Assembly (NCBI GenBank): GCA_001179505.1
Contig: CDMY01000500.1
Span: 1 to 64,000, forward strand
Source: Vitrella brassicaformis CCMP3155
Taxonomy: Eukaryota > Protista > Chromerida
Direction of reading: 5' to 3'
DNA length: 64,000 bases
The translations under genes were made by a program, and so were the position numbers. Of this stretch, positions 54,250 through 62,025 are shown piece after piece (the first letter of the stretch is position 1; each line of letters starts with the position of its first letter). The notes beneath the pieces are model-generated. The model was not told the DNA's origin and made no database searches. It saw only the letters and a program-made list of their open reading frames with translations.

Positions 54250-57200
54250 GTAGGTGAGCAAAGTCATCTCTTGCCACCCGCGAGTTACACACACTGGACA
54301 GACAGACCGATACGATACGTGTGTTGTGTTGTGTTCAATGTCAGGTTGTTTCCTCGCGCGTCCGCCTGATTTGCCGGTTCCGTTCGTGTGGTTAACGCCA
54401 CTGATGGATGGATCTCCCCCACTCTCTCCCCCCCTCTCTCCCTCTGCATCTCTCTCTGCCTGCCTGCCTGCCTGCCTGTCGTGTGTGTGTGCGGTGATAC
54501 ACCGCACCCACCGCGACCACCATCGTAGCCTGTAGTAACGACCGGACTGTCGACCGAACGGCTGGCGTGCGTGTTGTTGTGTTGTTTGCGTGGATGTGTA
54601 CGTGCCTGCCTGCCTGCCTGCCTGCCTCCCCCCTCTTGCCCATCCAATCCATCGTGTGTGTGCGTAATCCTCTCCTCTCTCGCCGCCTGGTGCCTGCCTG
54701 CCTGCCTGCCTGTCTCCTAGCTGATACGGACGGATGGCGGGTGTGTTGGCGGGCAGAGAGGGGGGCGGGGCGGCATGCGTGAGTACTTGAGGGTCGGAGA
54801 GGGGAGGGGGAAAAGGTGGGTTGGCGGGGCTGCTGTGATATGGCGTGGAGTGGCTCTCGTACTCTCGTTGTGTATGTGGGTATGTATGCGGCTATGTGGG
54901 GGGGTGAGTGAGTGGTGTCTGGCTGCAACTTTCTGCCTGTGTGTCGTCCCTCCCTCCCTACGGCAACACTGCCTACCTTCCACTTCTCTGCCTGTCTGTC
55001 TGTCCGTCTGCGTGTCGTGTCCATGCGCCACTTTCGCCCTTTTTGTGGCGAGGACACCCATCTGGACGCGCCCACGGGACGGACGGACGAACGGACACAC
55101 ACGGTGGTTCCTCTAGTTTCACAAACAGCACAGCAGAGAGAGGGGGCGGCACACACGGTGAGGTATTTCTTTGAAGCATGGCTGTGCCTGGCTGGCTGGC
55201 TGGCTGCTGTGTTACGGAAATGAGAGGGTCTGTCGGGTGTTTGGCCGGGTGTGGTGGCTGACGGATGGATGGATGGATGGACGGAAGTGATTTGATTTTG
55301 TTGAGAGAGAGGCACACGAAGAACAGACAGACAGACGGGGAGGGAGGAGGGCGGAAGTGACACACACCAACAAAGACACCCCACCCCCCACACCCACTCG
55401 CACACACACACCACCGACCAGGAGGTAGCTGCGTCCTCTGTCTCTGCAACACATACGGTCTCTCTCTTGGCGGCGTGTGTGGGTGTGTGGGTGTGTTCGT
55501 GTGGTGTGGTGGCTGCGGTGCCTAAGTGGGTGGCCTGGCTGGCTGAGTGGGCGGCGAAGAAAGGAAGAACGAAGGAAGGAACGGTTTCATCGCAGCCAGA
55601 CCTCTCTCCCTCTCTCCTTTCCTCTCTCTCTCCCTCTCTCTCTCTCTCTCTCCCGCGGTTGCTGGTGCCTGACTGCATGGGGCGGGTGGGGTGGGTGCAT
55701 GCCAACGTATGTGGGCGTGTGCGTGGATGCATCGGACGGACGGACGGACACGGACACAAACACTACACAGGGGTTCGTCGGGTGGTTAACACCTACCTGC
55801 CATTATTCTTCATCTTCTCGTGAGCCGACGGAGTCAATGCGTGGATAAAGAGAGCAACCACTTCTGGCAGACAGACAGACAGACAGACAGGAGGGAGATA
55901 GGTGGGTGACCTGAGCTGACGAGAAGAGGGAGCGAGCAACCACCACCACTCGCCCCGGCATCTACAGTTTTGCGGAGAGAGGCCGAGAAGGGGAGGGACC
56001 TGACTGACTGACTGACTGTCCGTGTGTGTGTGTGTGTGTCTGTACACTATAGGCGAGCGCTGCATGACACCCATCTGCCCGTCTTGATCACGGAATGGAA
56101 TGATGCAATATTGGTGTCCAGTGTGTCTGTCGCGGCTCCCCGCAACACGTGCCTTCCACGCCGGCGAGGGCATTGAGGCTCCAGGCCAACAAAAGGCCTG
56201 GAGAGACCTTGCCTTGTCTCGTTGGAAGGCATGTGGCAGGGGGATCGTGACGCGTCCACACTAGCCTAACCGTCCGTACTCACCGCGCACAATCTGTCTG
56301 TCTGGCACAGATTTTTTGTTCCAAGAGCAGAAACAGGTCACATGGTCCTCTCTCTCTGTCTCTGCCTCTCCCTCCCTCCCTCCCTCCCTCCCTCCATCTG
56401 TCTTTCTGCTTCCTTGCGCTTGTCTAGCGGCTTTGCGAGAGCGTTTGGGCGTGGGCGTGAGGGTGTGGCTGTGTGGTTGACTGGCTGGCTGCATGCCTGG
56501 CTGGCTAGTTGACCCCATGGATGGATGGACAATCGACGACAGACACTACATCACATCGGTTTCAAGCCATACGTACGATACGAGTGTACACGCCTACCTG
56601 CGGCAGGCAGGCTGGTGAGCAGTGGGTGGCCTAGAGCTTTCAACGGCCGGCCGTCCGCCTTCACGACACGAGTGAGTGACTAACTTAAGTACTTGACTAA
56701 CTGGCTGAGGGATACTGACTGACTAGGGAAAGTTAACTGACTGGGGAGGGAGGGAGGGTGAAGTCATGCTTCCTCTGGCAGACAAGATGGACGGGTGGGT
56801 GCCTGGGAGGGTGTGGTGGTGGTGCGGTCGCTGACTAATGCATGAATGCATGGAGCGATGGGATGGCTGGACATGTCTCCTCCCCCGCTCCCTGCCTGCC
56901 TCCCTGCATCGCACGGATGCCATCCGTAGTCACGCACACGGACGGGCGGCGTCGTGTGTGTATGACTGCAGCACTCATTATGTGCGGTGCGGGTGTGGAT
57001 GTACCCCTTGATTGATGGCTGGCTGGCTGGACTGGGCTTCTTTCTCGTGTGTGGTGTGAGTGAGTGACTGAGTGAGTTGATTCATGTGTGTGGACGACTC
57101 GGCCATACACTCCTTCGTTCGTAGTCAACTCAACCGGTGTTCTCATTCCCTTCTCGTAGACGGACTAGAAAAGTTCAGCCACCGACCCACCCGTCCCACA
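54250..57200. repeat. Microsatellite-rich intergenic/UTR region
   Basis: Dense (GT)n, (CT)n, (GCCT)n, (GACA)n and (GGAT)n tracts; ORFs here translate to CVCV/HTHT/QTDR junk. Confidence 0.7.
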
Positions 57201-57208
57201 CACGCTAT

Positions 57209-57894
57209 TCACTCCGTCACCACCAGCGTCCCCCCTGTCGGCTTTCCCGTGCTGCCGCTGCTGGTGGGTCCGGCGGCACTGCTGACGTGCTTCTGCACCA
57301 TCTGCAGCAGCTCAGCAATGTCCTCGGCAGAGAAACGCTCATACAAACTCTCAACCACCTGTGGAGAGAGAAGAAGCAACTCACGAGGCTTGATTGCCTG
57401 CCATGGCCGGTAGTTGCCTGGTTCCCCTCGAGATCTCCCCTCGCCCGCCCACCATTTGCAGCTCCACTTCTCTGGTCGGCGCGTGATTGATGATCTGCAG
57501 CACGTCCGCCTCGGCCAGGTCGAACCGCCCGATCAGCTCCCCTGTGAGCGCCTCGGCATCGCTCACACGGAAGCGGCCGCACGGCAGCCTCTCGATGTGG
57601 TCAACAACCTGCAAACAGAGCGCGGCATCACTCAATTGACCTGTGCGTGTGTGTGCCCTCATTGATCATTCATTCTGCCTCACTCACCCCCTGGTGCAGC
57701 GTCCTGGCCCTAAGTTCATCGTCGGAGATGTCAGCAAGGGTGGTGTGTGCGTCCGCGGCCTTGGCGAGGCTCTCGCGCAGCAGCTCTGCCACCTCGACGT
57801 TAGTCAGGTTGCCCGCGTTGCTGTCCACTCTGGGAGAGAGCAGAAAAAACCACAGACAAACACAGTGGATGTGTGGAACTTTGCGGATCTTCAT
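57209..57894 (-). CDS. RPC17: RNA polymerase III subunit RPC17/RPC9 (CRCP, Rpb4 family)
   Basis: MKI|VDSNAGNLTNVEVAELL...FDLAEADVLQIINHAPTREVELQM|VVESLYERFSAEDIAELL, matching the RPC17 N-terminal (N.a.L.N.EV..LL) and HRDC-like motifs. Confidence 0.85.
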
Positions 57895-58327
57895 TTCTGG
57901 TGTTACACTTTCATTCGACGCCTCCCTGTGAGCTCATTGCTTCGCCACTCCAGTTCCTCCTTTCTTGGTCGCTCTTAAGCTCGCAGGCGCGAAGTTCGGC
58001 ACAAATCGTTGTTTCCCAAGGCTCCACGAATCACCTGTGAGTTCGCGAGGTAGTCCCACTTCATCCCCATCCAGATCGACCAAGCTCTTTGTGCCTTTCG
58101 ACATCGTGTGGAGCGAGGCAGTGGAGGGAGCCCTTAGGGCATTCATCGACACGAAGCCTCGCATCGCCCGATGGCGGTAAGGACAGACTTTATCCGAAGG
58201 GTCCAGAACGGACATTTCGAGGTCACATCGATGCGTGTTTCGCGATTAGTCAAGGAGGGCACCAGACGGCGTCCGGAGGGCCTGAGAGTGTCACCCCTTC
58301 GCTCGGTGAGCGAGTCATTGTCTTCCG

Positions 58328-61300
58328 ATGGACCGCTCCGCTTATGGTGTGCCGACCGGGAGCGCACCCGGACTGGACGCTTCTCCCGCAGCCTCCTCGT
58401 CGATGCCAGCAGGGTTCGTCGGCTCTGGTGCCGCATCCCATGCCCCACCAGCCACCGCCGACCAGGCAGCATTCTCGCAGCCCTACAGCTGCCAGCCGTC
58501 CCGCAGCCCCCCGCCGGCCACGCCGCTGCCAGTGAATGAGTTGAGCAAGGCCGTGCCCGACGTGCCGATGCCCGTGCTGGCCAACCTCCTGGGCAGCCTC
58601 TCCCAGGCGGACCTCAAGCGGGTCATCGATGACCCATCGGTGCTGCCGTCGCTCGTGGCCAATGCCAATGCCTCCTGCTGGATGACCCCCCGGCAGCAGG
58701 CAGGATCGGCCAATCCCCCCACCATGGCCTACTCGGGGCCACTCAACTGCCCCTCGCCACACCAATCGCCCGGATGCCCACCTCCAGGCGGGCCGTTTGG
58801 ACCTTGGCCGATGGGCGGCCCTCTGGCTCCTGGGCCAGGCATGCTGGACATGAGTGTCGGTGTTCCGGGTTTTGCGTGCCTGGCGGCGACCAACCCTGAA
58901 ATGCCCAACCCTGGACCATGCCCAAAGTGCGGCGATCAGGTGAGGAAGAAACACACACACAAACACGACGGGGGAATGTGCTTGGGAGGACACAGATATC
59001 TGAGTATTGGGGCTTTGTGGTCGTGTGTTCAGTGGATTCCCTTCAAGAACGACTCCGGTGTGCTGTATCTGTGCCGCTCTGGCGACCGTACGCACCACTA
59101 CCAGTTCCCCTGCTGCGTCCGGTGCGGGGGCGACTGGGCGCTCTCCTACAAGGACGAGAACAGCTACGAGCTGGTGTGTCTGGGCCACGAGCCCAGCGGC
59201 ATCCCCCCCAGCCCCGACCACAACCTCCCCCTCCCCTCCCTCTTCTGCCAAAAGTGCGGGGGCAAGTACAAGGCCGAGTTCAAGGACGACACCTACGTGT
59301 TGCGCTGCCTCGACGACAAGTGGCGCGAGCACGACTGGTGGCGTGAGAACGACCGGTGGTGCAGACGACGCACACACCAGAGGCACAGGAAACTCGCCGG
59401 CGCGCGCAAGTCCAACCGATCTATGACGGAGCCGCACAGCAAGTCCCTGGACCAGATGCTCGGGAGGAGCAAACATCGCGGGAGTCAGCACCATCACCAG
59501 CACCAACACAAGAACGGGGAGCCACAGCCACAGCAGCTGCCGGGCGGGCCGCTGGCCGTCGAGCACCCGCCGCCCGTGCCGTTGTCGTTCGGTTTCAGTG
59601 CGCTCGGCAACCCGGGGGCGCCGCCTGTCCAGATGCCTCCACCAGGACCTGGACCTGGACCAGGTATGTGCACACGAGAGGGAGAAAGGGCACCGATGCG
59701 TTTGCACGTCCTCAAGCATCGCCTTGTGCCGTCCATGTCTGTGTTCAGGGTTCGTTCTGCCCCCTTCCTTCGGAGGCGGCGCCCGCCCCTTCGAGACGCC
59801 GCCCAGCTTCTCGTACGGCGCCCCCGTCGTGGAGCCCCTCTTCTCAGCCCCATACACGCAGCCGTTCCCCCAGCGCCCCTACGCCAGCGGCCCACTCGCC
59901 TCTTTTGACGCATCTCGCAGCGCCTTCGCCGACACCACCAACGCACCACCGCCGAGCAATGCGTTCGGCAGGCGCGCCACCCTACCGGATGTGCCCAGAC
60001 TCCCCCACACATCCGCCCCGCGGTTGATTAGGGAGGAGGGAGATGGCAGAGAAGGGCAGCGGGACCCCTCGGCGTCGCAGCAGCGTGAGGGGACCGATAT
60101 GGGGCCTCCCTCCCTTGCTGACACGCCTCAGCTGGGGATGCTCGGCATGGGCGAGGGTGACGTGGACTCGTTCCCACCGCCCCCTGCATCAGACATGGGC
60201 GACGGCAACCCTCTGGGCGGTCTGCCGGCCCCGGCGATAGACGTTGACTCCGGTTTCGACCTCTCGAGTGCCCGCATTGCTATCGAACACACGCCGTCGA
60301 ACCTCTCCGAGCTGGATTTGTCCATGGCCATGTCGCCCGAGCAAGTGGCGTCATTCTTCGACCCATCCAGAGGACAGTCGTGCGACCCGCCGCGTCAGAC
60401 GACTGACCAGCTGTCGATGGACACCGACCAGCCTGTGGACGCGAGCACAGCGCCCAACCTGCCGGTGCCGGTCAATGTCGTCAAGAAAGAGTTGAAGGGA
60501 GACGAGATGGCCGCTGCTGCGGCTGCGGCTGCTAGTGGTGCTGGGGCGGCAGGGGGGCGGCCGCGTGACTCCGTCTACAACCAGCCCAAGCAGCTGCGCG
60601 TTGTCATGGACCTCACGGCCTACAAGTGGAACATCCAGCGCATCGGGAGCCTTCTTGGCCCGCAGCAGCAGCTGGGGACCATCATCAAGGCCCCCAGCGG
60701 CGACAACATGCGGGTCATGGCCAACACCGCCATCCAGGCGGGCGCCGGGGCCATCTGTGTGTCGTCCAATGCCGATGCAGTCGTTGTGCGGTCCCTCTCT
60801 GACACCACGCGCATCATCCGGGTGCGGCCCGCCTTTGCTGACGAGGTGGCGTGCGCTCTCCCCTATCGCGTGGAGGAGCTGGTGGGCGACCTGGAGAACG
60901 CCCGGGAGCTGAGCCTCATTGCGCAGAGGCACCGTGCGCAGATTCCCGTGCACATCGAGATCGACTCAGGGATAGGGCGGGCGGGGTTCTTTTTGCACCA
61001 GATGGCGGACCTCAAGCAGGTGGCCAACATGGCGGGCCTGCGGGTGGTGGGGCTGGTGACGACCTTCCTGGACAGCGGGGGGCCGAGCAGCAACATGGGC
61101 GACCTGGAGAGGCTGCTACAGGCATTCCACCGGTATGCAGACCACCTCGAGAAGGAGGGGGTCATCCCCCCCAACACGCCACGCTCATGTGGGTCTGTCG
61201 CCACCGATGCCGCGCTTATCCGCCTCTTCGTCAAGGTGGGGAAGGAAGCCAAAGAATGGATCCACACATTGATTCGTTTCTAGTTCACACACCGTGTGTG

Positions 61301-62025
61301 CGCCTCGCCTGTGTGACACATGTGTGTATCATCAGATGAAGATGAGCATCATCCGCATCGGGCGCATCGCCTACGGCCTCAAGGAAGCCGCCGCACTCGA
61401 GCGCGTCCGGGCCGACCCCTCCCTGTCCTGGGCGGCGGAGCTGCGACCCGTCATGAGTGCACTCACCTGGATCGTGTCCATCCGCAAGAGCCCGGCCGCC
61501 GCCACCGCCAGCCAGGCCACTGGAGCCAAGGAGGACACCATCCTGGCGACCGTGCCCGTGGGCTTCGGGCAGGGCTACCCCCGGTCGCTCTCACACCGTG
61601 GTGTGGTGCTGGTCAAGGGCCACCGGTGCCGGCTTGCGGGGGCGGTGTCGATGGACATGACCACCATCGACGTCACGCCCATCGCATCGCAAACCAACGT
61701 GCAGGTGGGCGACGAGGTGGTGCTGTTTGGCGAGAACCTGGCCCTCGACGAGATGGCATCTGGGGGAGGGGCCGTGAGCGCCGAGGTGCTCATGTCGCTG
61801 GCGTGGCTCAACCCGGTCGAGTACATCGGCCAGGGCGACCAGGAGGAGGAGGACGGCCCGCAGCCGACGGTCGTTAAGGTGGAGAGGGACTCGCCCAGGG
61901 GATGGGAGAACAGCGGAGGGGAGGCCGCCGCGTCGTTTCCAGCAGCCAACCAGGGCGACAGGTCCCCCCTGGTGGCGATCGGGCAGCCTGTCGATGGCGA
62001 TACGAGGGGGGCGGGGCAGACATAG
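58328..62025 (+). CDS. Fusion protein: Pro-rich N-terminus, three C3H zinc-ribbon-like repeats, degenerate alanine-racemase (PLP fold III) domain
   Basis: Phase-compatible introns ~58940-59031, 59664-59748 and 61237-61335 join the ORFs. Alr-like motifs: MDLTAYKWNI, IIKA, VHIEIDSGIGRAG, IRIGRIAYG, LRPVMS, ATVPVGFGQGYPRSLS, GAVSMDM, VGDEVVLFG. Confidence 0.8.

What the first reader, a model, noticed from the sequence alone, without database searches (positions are those of the whole stretch)
60570..62025. Alanine-racemase fold that keeps the PLP lysine but has lost the catalytic tyrosine: a probable pseudo-enzyme or new activity
Seen against the canonical Alr motifs (established, Geobacillus numbering): Lys39 is kept (IIKA, AAG at 60687), but KANAYGHG becomes KAPSGDN (Tyr43 lost). 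HF becomes TF (His166 lost). The VSYG loop carrying Tyr265' reads ATAS-QATG (Tyr absent), GYADG becomes GFGQG, and YE becomes AE (Tyr354 lost). GR.G, R.G..YG and SMDM are retained. Two-base racemisation needs Tyr265'. The ORF is intact and spliced, so it does not look like a decaying pseudogene. Inference: a ligand-sensing or scaffold domain, or an altered PLP chemistry, in a eukaryote that has no peptidoglycan need.
Basis: partly seen in the sequence, partly recalled or inferred. Interest (0 to 1): 0.72.

Follow-up and report, generated by a model that had tools for sequence, protein, structure and literature searches.

The report
Alanine racemase domain without catalytic residues
The alga Vitrella brassicaformis expresses a long protein whose end is a well-folded copy of a bacterial alanine racemase. 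That copy has lost the residues needed for normal racemase chemistry, so it is probably a binding or pairing module, and it is a single-species curiosity.

Summary
Window 60570-62025 is the C-terminal part of a four-exon, transcribed gene: Vitrella brassicaformis CCMP3155 CEM18466.1 / A0A0G4FV35, 1114-1139 aa. It carries Ala_racemase_N and Ala_racemase_C domains.

An AlphaFold2 model is confident (pLDDT 89) and best matches the bacterial broad-spectrum, lysine and alanine racemases.

Compared with 120 bacterial homologues:
- **Kept:** the four invariant PLP contacts, Lys39, Arg136, Arg219 and Gly221.
- **Lost:** Tyr43 (deleted), His166 (Thr), Tyr265' (Gln, with no Tyr anywhere in the loop), Ser204 (Asp) and His200 (Ser).

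An exhaustive search of 1.84 billion proteins finds no relative above 36% identity, so dN/dS cannot be computed.

- **Most likely (0.55):** a non-racemase binding or dimerising module in a regulatory or scaffold protein.
- **Not excluded:** altered PLP chemistry. Ornithine racemase also lacks this Tyr and His and is still active.

The scan noted this same stretch before (s1-201914, same genome).

This is a new variant of a known kind, of modest interest.

The parts
58328..58939 (+). Coding exon 1. The first in-frame ATG is at 58328. The database model P0121 starts at Met26 (58403). The sequence is rich in Pro/Ser/Gly/Ala.
   Evidence: ORF and splice sites read. The joint 58939|59033 is seen in X6 contig record 15.
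58940..59032 (+). Intron 1: 93 nt, GT..AG, with a length divisible by three.
   Evidence: The joint is skipped in the X6 contig (table 5).
59033..59663 (+). Coding exon 2.
58919..59340 (+). Three CxxCG...C...H zinc-ribbon-like repeats, starting at P0121 residues 173, 207 and 251. The first repeat is split by intron 1.
   Evidence: Pattern listing. Pfam gives only sub-threshold zinc-finger hits. The single-sequence AF2 model has pLDDT 43.5 with beta-hairpins and is inconclusive. No homologues were found.
59321..59515 (+). Cluster rich in Lys/Arg/His (P0121 residues about 276-340). It could be a nuclear-localisation or nucleic-acid-binding stretch; this is inference.
   Evidence: Composition scan.
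59664..59748 (+). Intron 2: 85 nt, GT..AG, phase 1.
59749..61235 (+). Coding exon 3. It holds a low-complexity acidic and proline-rich linker, then most of the racemase-like barrel from about 60594.
60609..61383 (+). Ala_racemase_N (PF01168) match, P0121 677-901. It is interrupted by intron 3.
   Evidence: (E 8.8e-28).
60687..60689 (+). Lys703, equivalent to Lys39 (the PLP Schiff-base lysine). Kept.
   Evidence: K in 120/120 homologues.
60696..60707 (+). S-G-D-N in place of A-Y-G-H-G. The Tyr43 column is deleted between 60698 and 60699, His45 is Asp and Gly46 is Asn.
60978..60980 (+). Arg800, equivalent to Arg136 (contacts PLP O3' and the substrate carboxylate). Kept.
   Evidence: Invariant column.
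61062..61064 (+). Thr828 in place of His166.
   Evidence: H in 119/120 homologues.
61194..61208 (+). S-V-A-T-D in place of H-x-x-N-S. His200 is Ser, Asn203 is Thr and Ser204 (a phosphate ligand) is Asp876.
   Evidence: The role of Ser204/Thr245 comes from PMC3485190.
61236..61335 (+). Intron 3: 100 nt, GT..AG, phase 0, inside the barrel.
   Evidence: The joint is seen in X1, X2 and X6.
61336..62025 (+). Coding exon 4, including the TAG stop at 62023-62025.
61354..61362 (+). Arg892-Ile-Gly894, equivalent to Arg219 (contacts the PLP N1) and Gly221. Kept.
   Evidence: Invariant columns.
61450..61803 (+). Ala_racemase_C (PF00842) match, P0121 924-1041.
   Evidence: E 4.2e-25.
61513..61515 (+). Gln945 at the Tyr265' column. 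HMMER puts a gap there instead. The whole loop has no Tyr.
   Evidence: The same letters appear in RNA-derived contigs X1 record 6, X2 record 9 and X6 record 15.
61829..62022 (+). Acidic, low-complexity C-terminal tail beyond the racemase fold.
   Evidence: The model has pLDDT below 50 at its end.
58177..58249 (+). Probable 5'-UTR intron (about 73 nt, GT..AG).
   Evidence: The loose end of X6 record 15 at 58249 (table 7) equals window 58146-58175.

Best explanation
This is a bacterial alanine/broad-spectrum-racemase gene that entered the Vitrella lineage. It acquired spliceosomal introns and became the C-terminal domain of a long, mostly disordered protein. That protein also carries three zinc-ribbon-like repeats and a basic cluster.

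The domain keeps the whole two-domain racemase fold and the residues that hold the pyridoxal ring (Lys39, Arg136, Arg219, Gly221).

It has lost the proton-transfer pair (Tyr265', His166) and the side chains that bind the cofactor phosphate. Tyr43 is deleted and Ser204 is now an Asp.

It therefore most likely no longer racemises amino acids. It probably serves as a non-catalytic module: a dimerisation and/or small-ligand-binding domain within a regulatory or scaffold protein.

Shown: the gene structure, expression, fold, which residues are kept and lost, and the absence of close relatives. Inferred: loss of racemase activity, weakened PLP binding, and the binding or dimerising role.
For: - **Gene model and expression.** All three coding introns are removed in one X6 contig, with no sequence differences.
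- **Identity.** P0121 is CEM18466.1 of Vitrella brassicaformis.
- **Fold.** Pfam finds both domains. The AF2 model has pLDDT 89.4 and pTM 0.89. Foldseek's best matches are BsrV, Lyr, Bsr-Ah and Bar at E 1e-32 to 1e-30 and TM 0.75-0.83, followed by alanine racemases.
- **Residues lost.** Y43 (120/120), H166 (119/120), Y265' (118/120) and S/T204 (119/120) are all replaced.
- **Residues kept.** K39, R136, R219, G221, Y225, M312 and 9 of the 10 conserved glycines are retained.
- **Model confidence.** The three lower-confidence stretches of the model are exactly the His166, Ser204 and Tyr265' loops.
- **Family score.** TIGR00492 scores 152 bits, below its cut-off of 168. The nearest bacterial relatives score 252 and 301.
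- **Published roles.** Tyr265' and Lys39 are the two catalytic bases, and Tyr43 and Ser204 bind the phosphate (PMC3485190; PMC6411801).
- **Context.** The domain follows about 650 residues of low-complexity sequence with CxxCG repeats and a basic cluster, and there is no signal peptide.
Against: - No biochemical data exist.
- Keeping all three invariant ring-binding residues on a long branch (1.09 substitutions per site) suggests that PLP binding may still be selected. That fits a sensor or an enzyme better than an inert scaffold.
- Ornithine racemase is active without Tyr265' and His166.
- The Y265A alanine racemase gains aldolase activity.
- No orthologue exists, so purifying selection cannot be shown.
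- The zinc-ribbon assignment is unconfirmed.
Confidence: 0.55

Rival explanations
1. This is an altered PLP enzyme. The domain still binds PLP through Lys39, Arg136, Arg219 and Gly221, and uses the lysine alone as a base on the D-face. Possible activities are aldol cleavage, beta-elimination or transamination of D- or beta-hydroxy-amino acids.
For: - The four invariant PLP contacts, Met312 and Arg290' are kept.
- The fold is intact.
- Y265A turns Geobacillus alanine racemase into an aldolase for D-beta-hydroxy-amino acids (Seebeck and Hilvert, as summarised in PMC6411801).
- The N-terminal half shows weak similarity to D-3-hydroxyaspartate aldolase.
Against: - The phosphate pocket is damaged. 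Tyr43 is deleted and Ser204 has become an acidic Asp.
- His166 and His200 are gone.
- The entryway residues Arg309' and Asp171 are replaced.
- No new conserved catalytic residue can be identified, because there are no orthologues.
- A fusion to about 650 disordered residues is unusual for a metabolic enzyme.
Confidence: 0.22
2. This is still a racemase that uses a different second base, as ornithine racemase does with Cys164.
For: Ornithine racemase lacks Tyr265' and His166 yet is active (PMC13397332). At the position equivalent to Cys164 (His166+3), the alga has Asp831.
Against: - Asp occurs at that column in 20 of 120 ordinary Tyr-containing racemases, so it is no signature.
- There is no Cys, Tyr or His in the His166 or Tyr265' loops.
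- The match to the NCBIfam ornithine-racemase model is negligible: 18.7 bits against a cut-off of 480.
- The phosphate ligands are also lost.
Confidence: 0.06
3. This is an evolutionary relic. The racemase-like part is a functionless remnant carried along in an expressed gene, and it is drifting.
For: - It is a singleton with no orthologue.
- It is among the most divergent family members. Its median identity to the bacterial rows is 27.5%, against a bacterial median of 34.9%, and only 2 of 119 rows are lower.
- Its end branch is twice the median length.
- Active-site residues are lost.
Against: - There is no stop or frameshift over about 390 codons.
- The AF2 fold is confident.
- It retains 17 of the 23 most conserved columns, including nearly all structural glycines and all ring-binding residues.
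- The in-domain intron is spliced correctly.
Confidence: 0.15

Closest known systems
Bacterial broad-spectrum / lysine / broad-specificity racemases (BsrV 4beu/7agz, Bsr-Ah 4bf5, Lyr 4dza, Bar 4dyj) and a clade of unnamed bacterial 'alanine racemases' (e.g. Kovacikia minuta WP_224343125, Ca. Hinthialibacter MDP8244558)
   Same: - These are the best sequence and structure matches.
- They share the same two-domain fold.
- Lys39, Arg136 and Arg219 are shared.
- The non-Tyr residue at position 354 and the GFG(E/Q)GYPRSL motif are shared.
- In a quick tree the domain falls in a 27-row clade with them (SH-aLRT 98).
   Different: - All of them keep Tyr43, His166, Ser/Thr204 and Tyr265'.
- The Arg-Asn pair (Lyr N174 is essential) reads Arg-Ala here.
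- They are free-standing enzymes of about 370-420 aa.
- Identity is at most 36%.
Ornithine racemase OrnR (NCBIfam NF040742)
   Same: It is a member of the alanine racemase superfamily that naturally lacks Tyr265' and His166 while keeping the Lys and the two Arg (PMC13397332).
   Different: OrnR has a strictly conserved catalytic Cys (945/945 sequences), and the alga has Asp at that place. Sequence similarity to the OrnR model is negligible. OrnR keeps its phosphate ligands.
MocR/GabR regulators (a DNA-binding domain fused to a PLP fold-type-I aminotransferase-like sensor)
   Same: The logic of a PLP-enzyme fold reused as a non-turnover effector-binding, dimerising domain next to a nucleic-acid-binding module (PMC6917764). 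This is a resemblance in how it might work, not in ancestry.
   Different: They have a different fold type (I, not III), are bacterial, and use a winged-HTH and not zinc-ribbon-like repeats. PLP binding is proven for GabR and untested here.
Antizyme inhibitor (AZIN), the ornithine-decarboxylase-like pseudoenzyme (from my own knowledge; no paper was retrieved)
   Same: It is a fold-type-III PLP-enzyme homologue that has lost catalysis and cofactor binding and acts by protein binding.
   Different: It comes from the decarboxylase branch (PF02784/PF00278), not the racemase branch. It is an animal protein with a known partner.

Membership tests
Alanine racemase family (PF01168 + PF00842; EC 5.1.1.1 and relatives) | A two-domain fold: an N-terminal (alpha/beta)8 barrel plus a C-terminal beta domain. 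| tested here: met
   Pfam E 8.8e-28 and 4.2e-25. AF2 pLDDT 89.4. Foldseek TM 0.73-0.83 to more than 50 racemase chains.
Alanine racemase family | The PLP Schiff-base lysine (Lys39). | tested here: met
   Lys703 lies in an invariant column.
Alanine racemase family | Arg136 and Arg219, which contact PLP O3' and N1. | tested here: met
   R800 and R892 lie in invariant columns.
Alanine racemase family | The second catalytic base, Tyr265', from the partner subunit. | tested here: not met
   Gln945 or a gap stands there. There is no Tyr in residues 899-965, and Y is found in 118/120 homologues.
Alanine racemase family | His166, which bridges Tyr265' and Arg219. | tested here: not met
   Thr828 stands there, and H is found in 119/120 homologues.
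Alanine racemase family | The phosphate-binding side chains Tyr43 and Ser/Thr204. | tested here: not met
   Tyr43 is deleted (Y in 120/120). Ser204 is Asp876 (S/T in 119/120). Roles are from PMC3485190.
Alanine racemase family | The NCBIfam TIGR00492 equivalog score cut-off (168 bits). | tested here: not met
   The domain scores 152 bits. The nearest bacterial relatives score 252 and 301.
Alanine racemase family | A head-to-tail homodimer forming two shared active sites. | not testable with these tools
   Only monomer prediction is available, and no coordinates are returned.
Alanine racemase family | PLP binding and racemase activity. | not testable with these tools
   This needs protein expression, a 420-nm spectrum and an activity assay.
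Broad-spectrum racemases (Bsr/Lyr/Bar) | The Arg-Asn pair (Lyr R173-N174), and a residue other than Tyr at position 354 that widens the pocket. | tested here: inconclusive
   Position 354 is Ala, as in Bar. The Asn is Ala801, and Lyr N174L is inactive. The full published Bsr signature was not available to me.
Ornithine racemase (OrnR) | The strictly conserved catalytic Cys at His166+3. | tested here: not met
   Asp831 stands there. The position was mapped from the text of PMC13397332, not from an OrnR sequence alignment. The NF040742 model scores 18.7 bits against a cut-off of 480.

The most novel reading that the evidence does not exclude
The domain is a eukaryotic, fold-type-III counterpart of the GabR/MocR principle. 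It still forms a PLP internal aldimine on Lys703 and captures an amino acid (possibly a D-amino acid) as an external aldimine. Because both proton-transfer residues are gone, it cannot turn the amino acid over. The resulting conformational or dimer change would then control the zinc-ribbon and basic N-terminal part, which may bind nucleic acid. That would make it an amino-acid sensor built from a horizontally acquired racemase.
Probability: 0.1. Interest if true: 0.7.

Novelty: new variant of a known kind. Interest (0 to 1): 0.36.

Why it matters
If the reading holds, this is a natural alanine-racemase-family pseudoenzyme. I found no report of one. The case is clean: a bacterial metabolic enzyme acquired by a eukaryote, given introns, fused to regulatory-looking sequence, and stripped of its proton-transfer residues while the cofactor-ring contacts stay.

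It also offers a natural experiment alongside the engineered Y265A aldolase and the Cys-dependent ornithine racemase. It asks what an alanine-racemase active site does with the lysine alone.

Its reach is limited. It is a single-species orphan with no orthologues, so general lessons depend on biochemistry that has not been done.

Tried and rejected
1. **Word-index search, barrel half.** The search with the barrel part of exon 3 found nothing. This was a limit of the index, because the exhaustive search found 1455 relatives.
2. **Orthologue search for a dN/dS test.** The exhaustive search gave only the protein itself at or below E 1e-30. The next hit has 36% identity, so the test is impossible.
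3. **Donor lineage.**
   - Cluster look-ups named only a cyanobacterium (Kovacikia), Ca. Hinthialibacter, a gammaproteobacterial MAG and a Pseudarthrobacter.
   - The genome scan returned many phyla at no more than 32% identity.
   - The donor is unresolved. An endosymbiotic (cyanobacterial) origin is neither supported nor excluded.
4. **N-terminal region.** There are no Pfam hits above threshold, no Atlas hit and no homologue. The single-sequence AF2 model is unreliable (pLDDT 43.5).
5. **Alternative catalytic base.** No Tyr, Cys or His lies in the two active-site loops. Asp831, at the OrnR Cys position, sits in a variable column.
6. **Literature.** No paper links alanine racemase with Vitrella or Chromera, and none describes an alanine-racemase pseudoenzyme.
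7. **Bacterial contamination.** Rejected. The gene has four GT..AG introns, lies on a 64.7-kb eukaryotic contig, and its spliced form is present in three runs.
Full report
**How the spliced gene was handled**

- window:60570-61235:+ for the racemase part of exon 3;
- window:61336-62022:+ for exon 4;
- window:58328-58939, 59033-59662 and 59751-60569 for the upstream parts.

Whole-domain analyses used the database's own protein P0121, which the exhaustive search returned. That is the annotated product of this gene.

Read laying was given 4001 letters.

**Gene model and expression**

Reading the sequence and checking frames gives four coding exons on the + strand:

| Exon | Window coordinates |
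|---|---|
| 1 | 58328-58939 |
| 2 | 59033-59663 |
| 3 | 59749-61235 |
| 4 | 61336-62025 (TAG stop at 62023) |

- The introns are 93, 85 and 100 nt long, and all are GT..AG.
- One 4283-nt contig of run X6 lies on the stretch with exactly these three parts skipped. Runs X1 and X2 carry the 100-nt skip. X3 holds the unspliced, colinear DNA form.
- No run differs from the window in sequence.
- The locus is therefore transcribed and spliced as modelled.
- The product has 1139 aa from the first ATG. The database model P0121 has 1114 aa, starts at Met26 and is otherwise identical.
- P0121 is CEM18466.1 / UniProt A0A0G4FV35 of Vitrella brassicaformis CCMP3155. It is automatically named 'Alanine racemase C-terminal domain-containing protein' and lies on a 64,666-nt contig.

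**The fold**

- Pfam finds Ala_racemase_N (P0121 677-901, E 8.8e-28) and Ala_racemase_C (924-1041, E 4.2e-25), and nothing else above threshold.
- An AlphaFold2 model of P0121:655-1060, built on a 121-row alignment, has mean pLDDT 89.4 and pTM 0.89.
- Foldseek against the PDB puts the following first, at E 1e-32 to 1e-30 and TM 0.75-0.83: the Vibrio broad-spectrum racemase BsrV, the Proteus lysine racemase, the Aeromonas Bsr and the Pseudomonas Bar. Dozens of alanine and serine racemases follow.
- Sequence searches of the PDB agree.
- The only stretches of the model with lower confidence (pLDDT 74-80) are residues 825-844, 865-884 and 935-954. These are the loops that normally carry His166, Ser204 and Tyr265'.

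**Residues, checked against 120 bacterial homologues** (alignment A2; column counts)

Kept:
- Lys39 (K703, AAG at 60687), invariant;
- Arg136 (R800), invariant;
- Arg219 (R892), invariant;
- Gly221 (G894), invariant;
- Tyr225, Met312, Asp313 and Arg290';
- 9 of the 10 near-invariant glycines.

Lost:

| Canonical residue | In Vitrella | Bacterial homologues |
|---|---|---|
| Tyr43 | one-residue deletion | Y in 120/120 |
| His45 | Asp | H in 106/120 |
| Gly46 | Asn | G in 115/120 |
| His166 | Thr828 | H in 119/120 |
| His200 | Ser872 | H in 112/120 |
| Ser204 | Asp876 | S/T in 119/120 |
| Tyr265' | Gln945, or a gap in HMMER's alignment | Y in 118/120 |
| Arg309' | Ala988 | R in 75/120 |
| Asp171 | Gly833 | D in 78, E in 22 of 120 |

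- No Tyr exists anywhere between residues 899 and 965.
- In all, 6 of the 23 columns that are at least 93% conserved are missed. Bacterial rows miss 0.57 on average and 4 at most.
- The published roles of these residues are as follows. Lys39 and Tyr265' are the two bases. Tyr43 and Ser204 (Tyr78 and Thr245 in Lyr) bind the phosphate. Arg136 and Arg219 hold O3' and N1 (PMC3485190). His166 tunes Tyr265' (PMC6411801).

- The Tyr354->Ala change and the Phe in GFGQG are not losses peculiar to this gene.
- In the 27-row clade around it, position 354 is T10/A7/Y4 and the GY position is F in 10 of 26 rows.
- The nearest relatives, such as Kovacikia minuta, read GFGEGYPRSL and SVHTE while keeping KANAYGHG, TH[FL] and IGYG.
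- In Lyr and Bar the 354 position is Thr or Ala, and water binds that phosphate oxygen.
- Lys129->Glu lies in a variable column.

**Relatives and origin**

- An exhaustive HMMER search of 1.84 billion representative proteins with the barrel part found only one protein at or below E 1e-30, namely P0121 itself. The next hit has 36% identity (Ca. Hinthialibacter antarcticus alanine racemase, E 1e-21).
- The word search with exon 4 gave only bacterial or metagenomic alanine racemases, at 33-47% local identity (36-38% among the top hits).
- In a quick LG+G4 tree the domain falls in a 27-row clade (SH-aLRT 98) with these sequences and Bsr-like proteins. Its end branch is 1.09 against a median of 0.55 (rank 7 of 121).
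- Its median identity to the bacterial rows is 27.5%, against 34.9% among the bacteria themselves.
- The origin is bacterial, the donor is unresolved, and no orthologue is known. dN/dS cannot be computed.
- NCBI's equivalog model TIGR00492 scores the domain at 152 bits, under its cut-off of 168. Two close bacterial relatives score 252 and 301.

**Context within the protein**

About 650 residues precede the domain:
- a Pro/Ser/Gly/Ala-rich start with no signal peptide;
- three CxxCG...C...H repeats at P0121 173, 207 and 251 (window 58919-59340, also noted by s1-201929);
- a Lys/Arg/His cluster at 276-340;
- a Pro/Gly-rich and then acidic linker.

These parts have no family match, no homologue and no reliable single-sequence model.

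**Interpretation**

- Canonical two-base racemisation is very unlikely. The second base and its helper His are gone, and no substitute is visible.
- PLP binding is doubtful, because two phosphate ligands are lost and one of them is now an acidic residue.
- Even so, the three invariant ring contacts survive on a long branch. That argues for continued constraint on at least part of the pocket.
- I therefore favour (0.55) a non-catalytic binding or dimerising module in a regulatory or scaffold protein.

The rivals are:
- An altered single-base PLP enzyme (0.22). The precedent is the Y265A aldolase.
- A functionless relic (0.15).
- A racemase with another base (0.06). The precedent is ornithine racemase, which lacks both Tyr265' and His166 and uses a Cys at His166+3 (PMC13397332). 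The alga has Asp there, but that column is variable in ordinary racemases.

The most novel reading still open is a GabR-like aldimine sensor (see PMC6917764).

**Verdict**

This is a new variant of a known kind, and because it is a single-species orphan without functional data, the interest is modest.

Noticed in passing
window 58146-58249: The X6 transcript contig carries 183 further letters upstream of 58249. The last 30 of them equal window 58146-58175. This implies a fourth GT..AG intron of about 73 nt (58177-58249) in the 5' UTR.
   Followed up: partly
window 57200-58105 (- strand): A small multi-exon gene appears to start head-to-head with this one (ATG read on the minus strand near 58105). 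The 5' end of the X6 contig would overlap its first exon. That suggests a shared promoter region or overlapping 5' UTRs.
   Followed up: no
window 58919-59340: There are three CxxCG-x(12-17)-C-x(2-7)-H repeats, the first one split by an in-frame 93-nt intron. They have no Pfam family, no homologue elsewhere, and a low-confidence model with beta-hairpins after each CxxCG.
   Followed up: partly
window 60510-60543 and 61495-61516: Short GC-rich alanine-tract codon runs (GCN repeats) attract pieces of unrelated contigs in runs X3 and X6. These are low-complexity cross-matches, not alternative joints.
   Followed up: no
another piece of the same genome (earlier notes s1-231258, s1-227121): Unchecked first-reader notes report a second bacterial-type racemase fold with both catalytic Cys replaced, and an otubain fold with its catalytic Cys replaced. 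If real, this genome may hold several enzyme folds with dead active sites.
   Followed up: no
bacterial proteins P0002, P0003, P0005-P0008, P0010, P0014, P0127: This is a distinct bacterial 'alanine racemase' clade of about 371 aa (Kovacikia minuta, a gammaproteobacterial MAG and metagenomes). It reads GRVSLNVTT in place of GRVCMDxxM and SVHTE in place of TIPYE. Its specificity is apparently uncharacterised.
   Followed up: no
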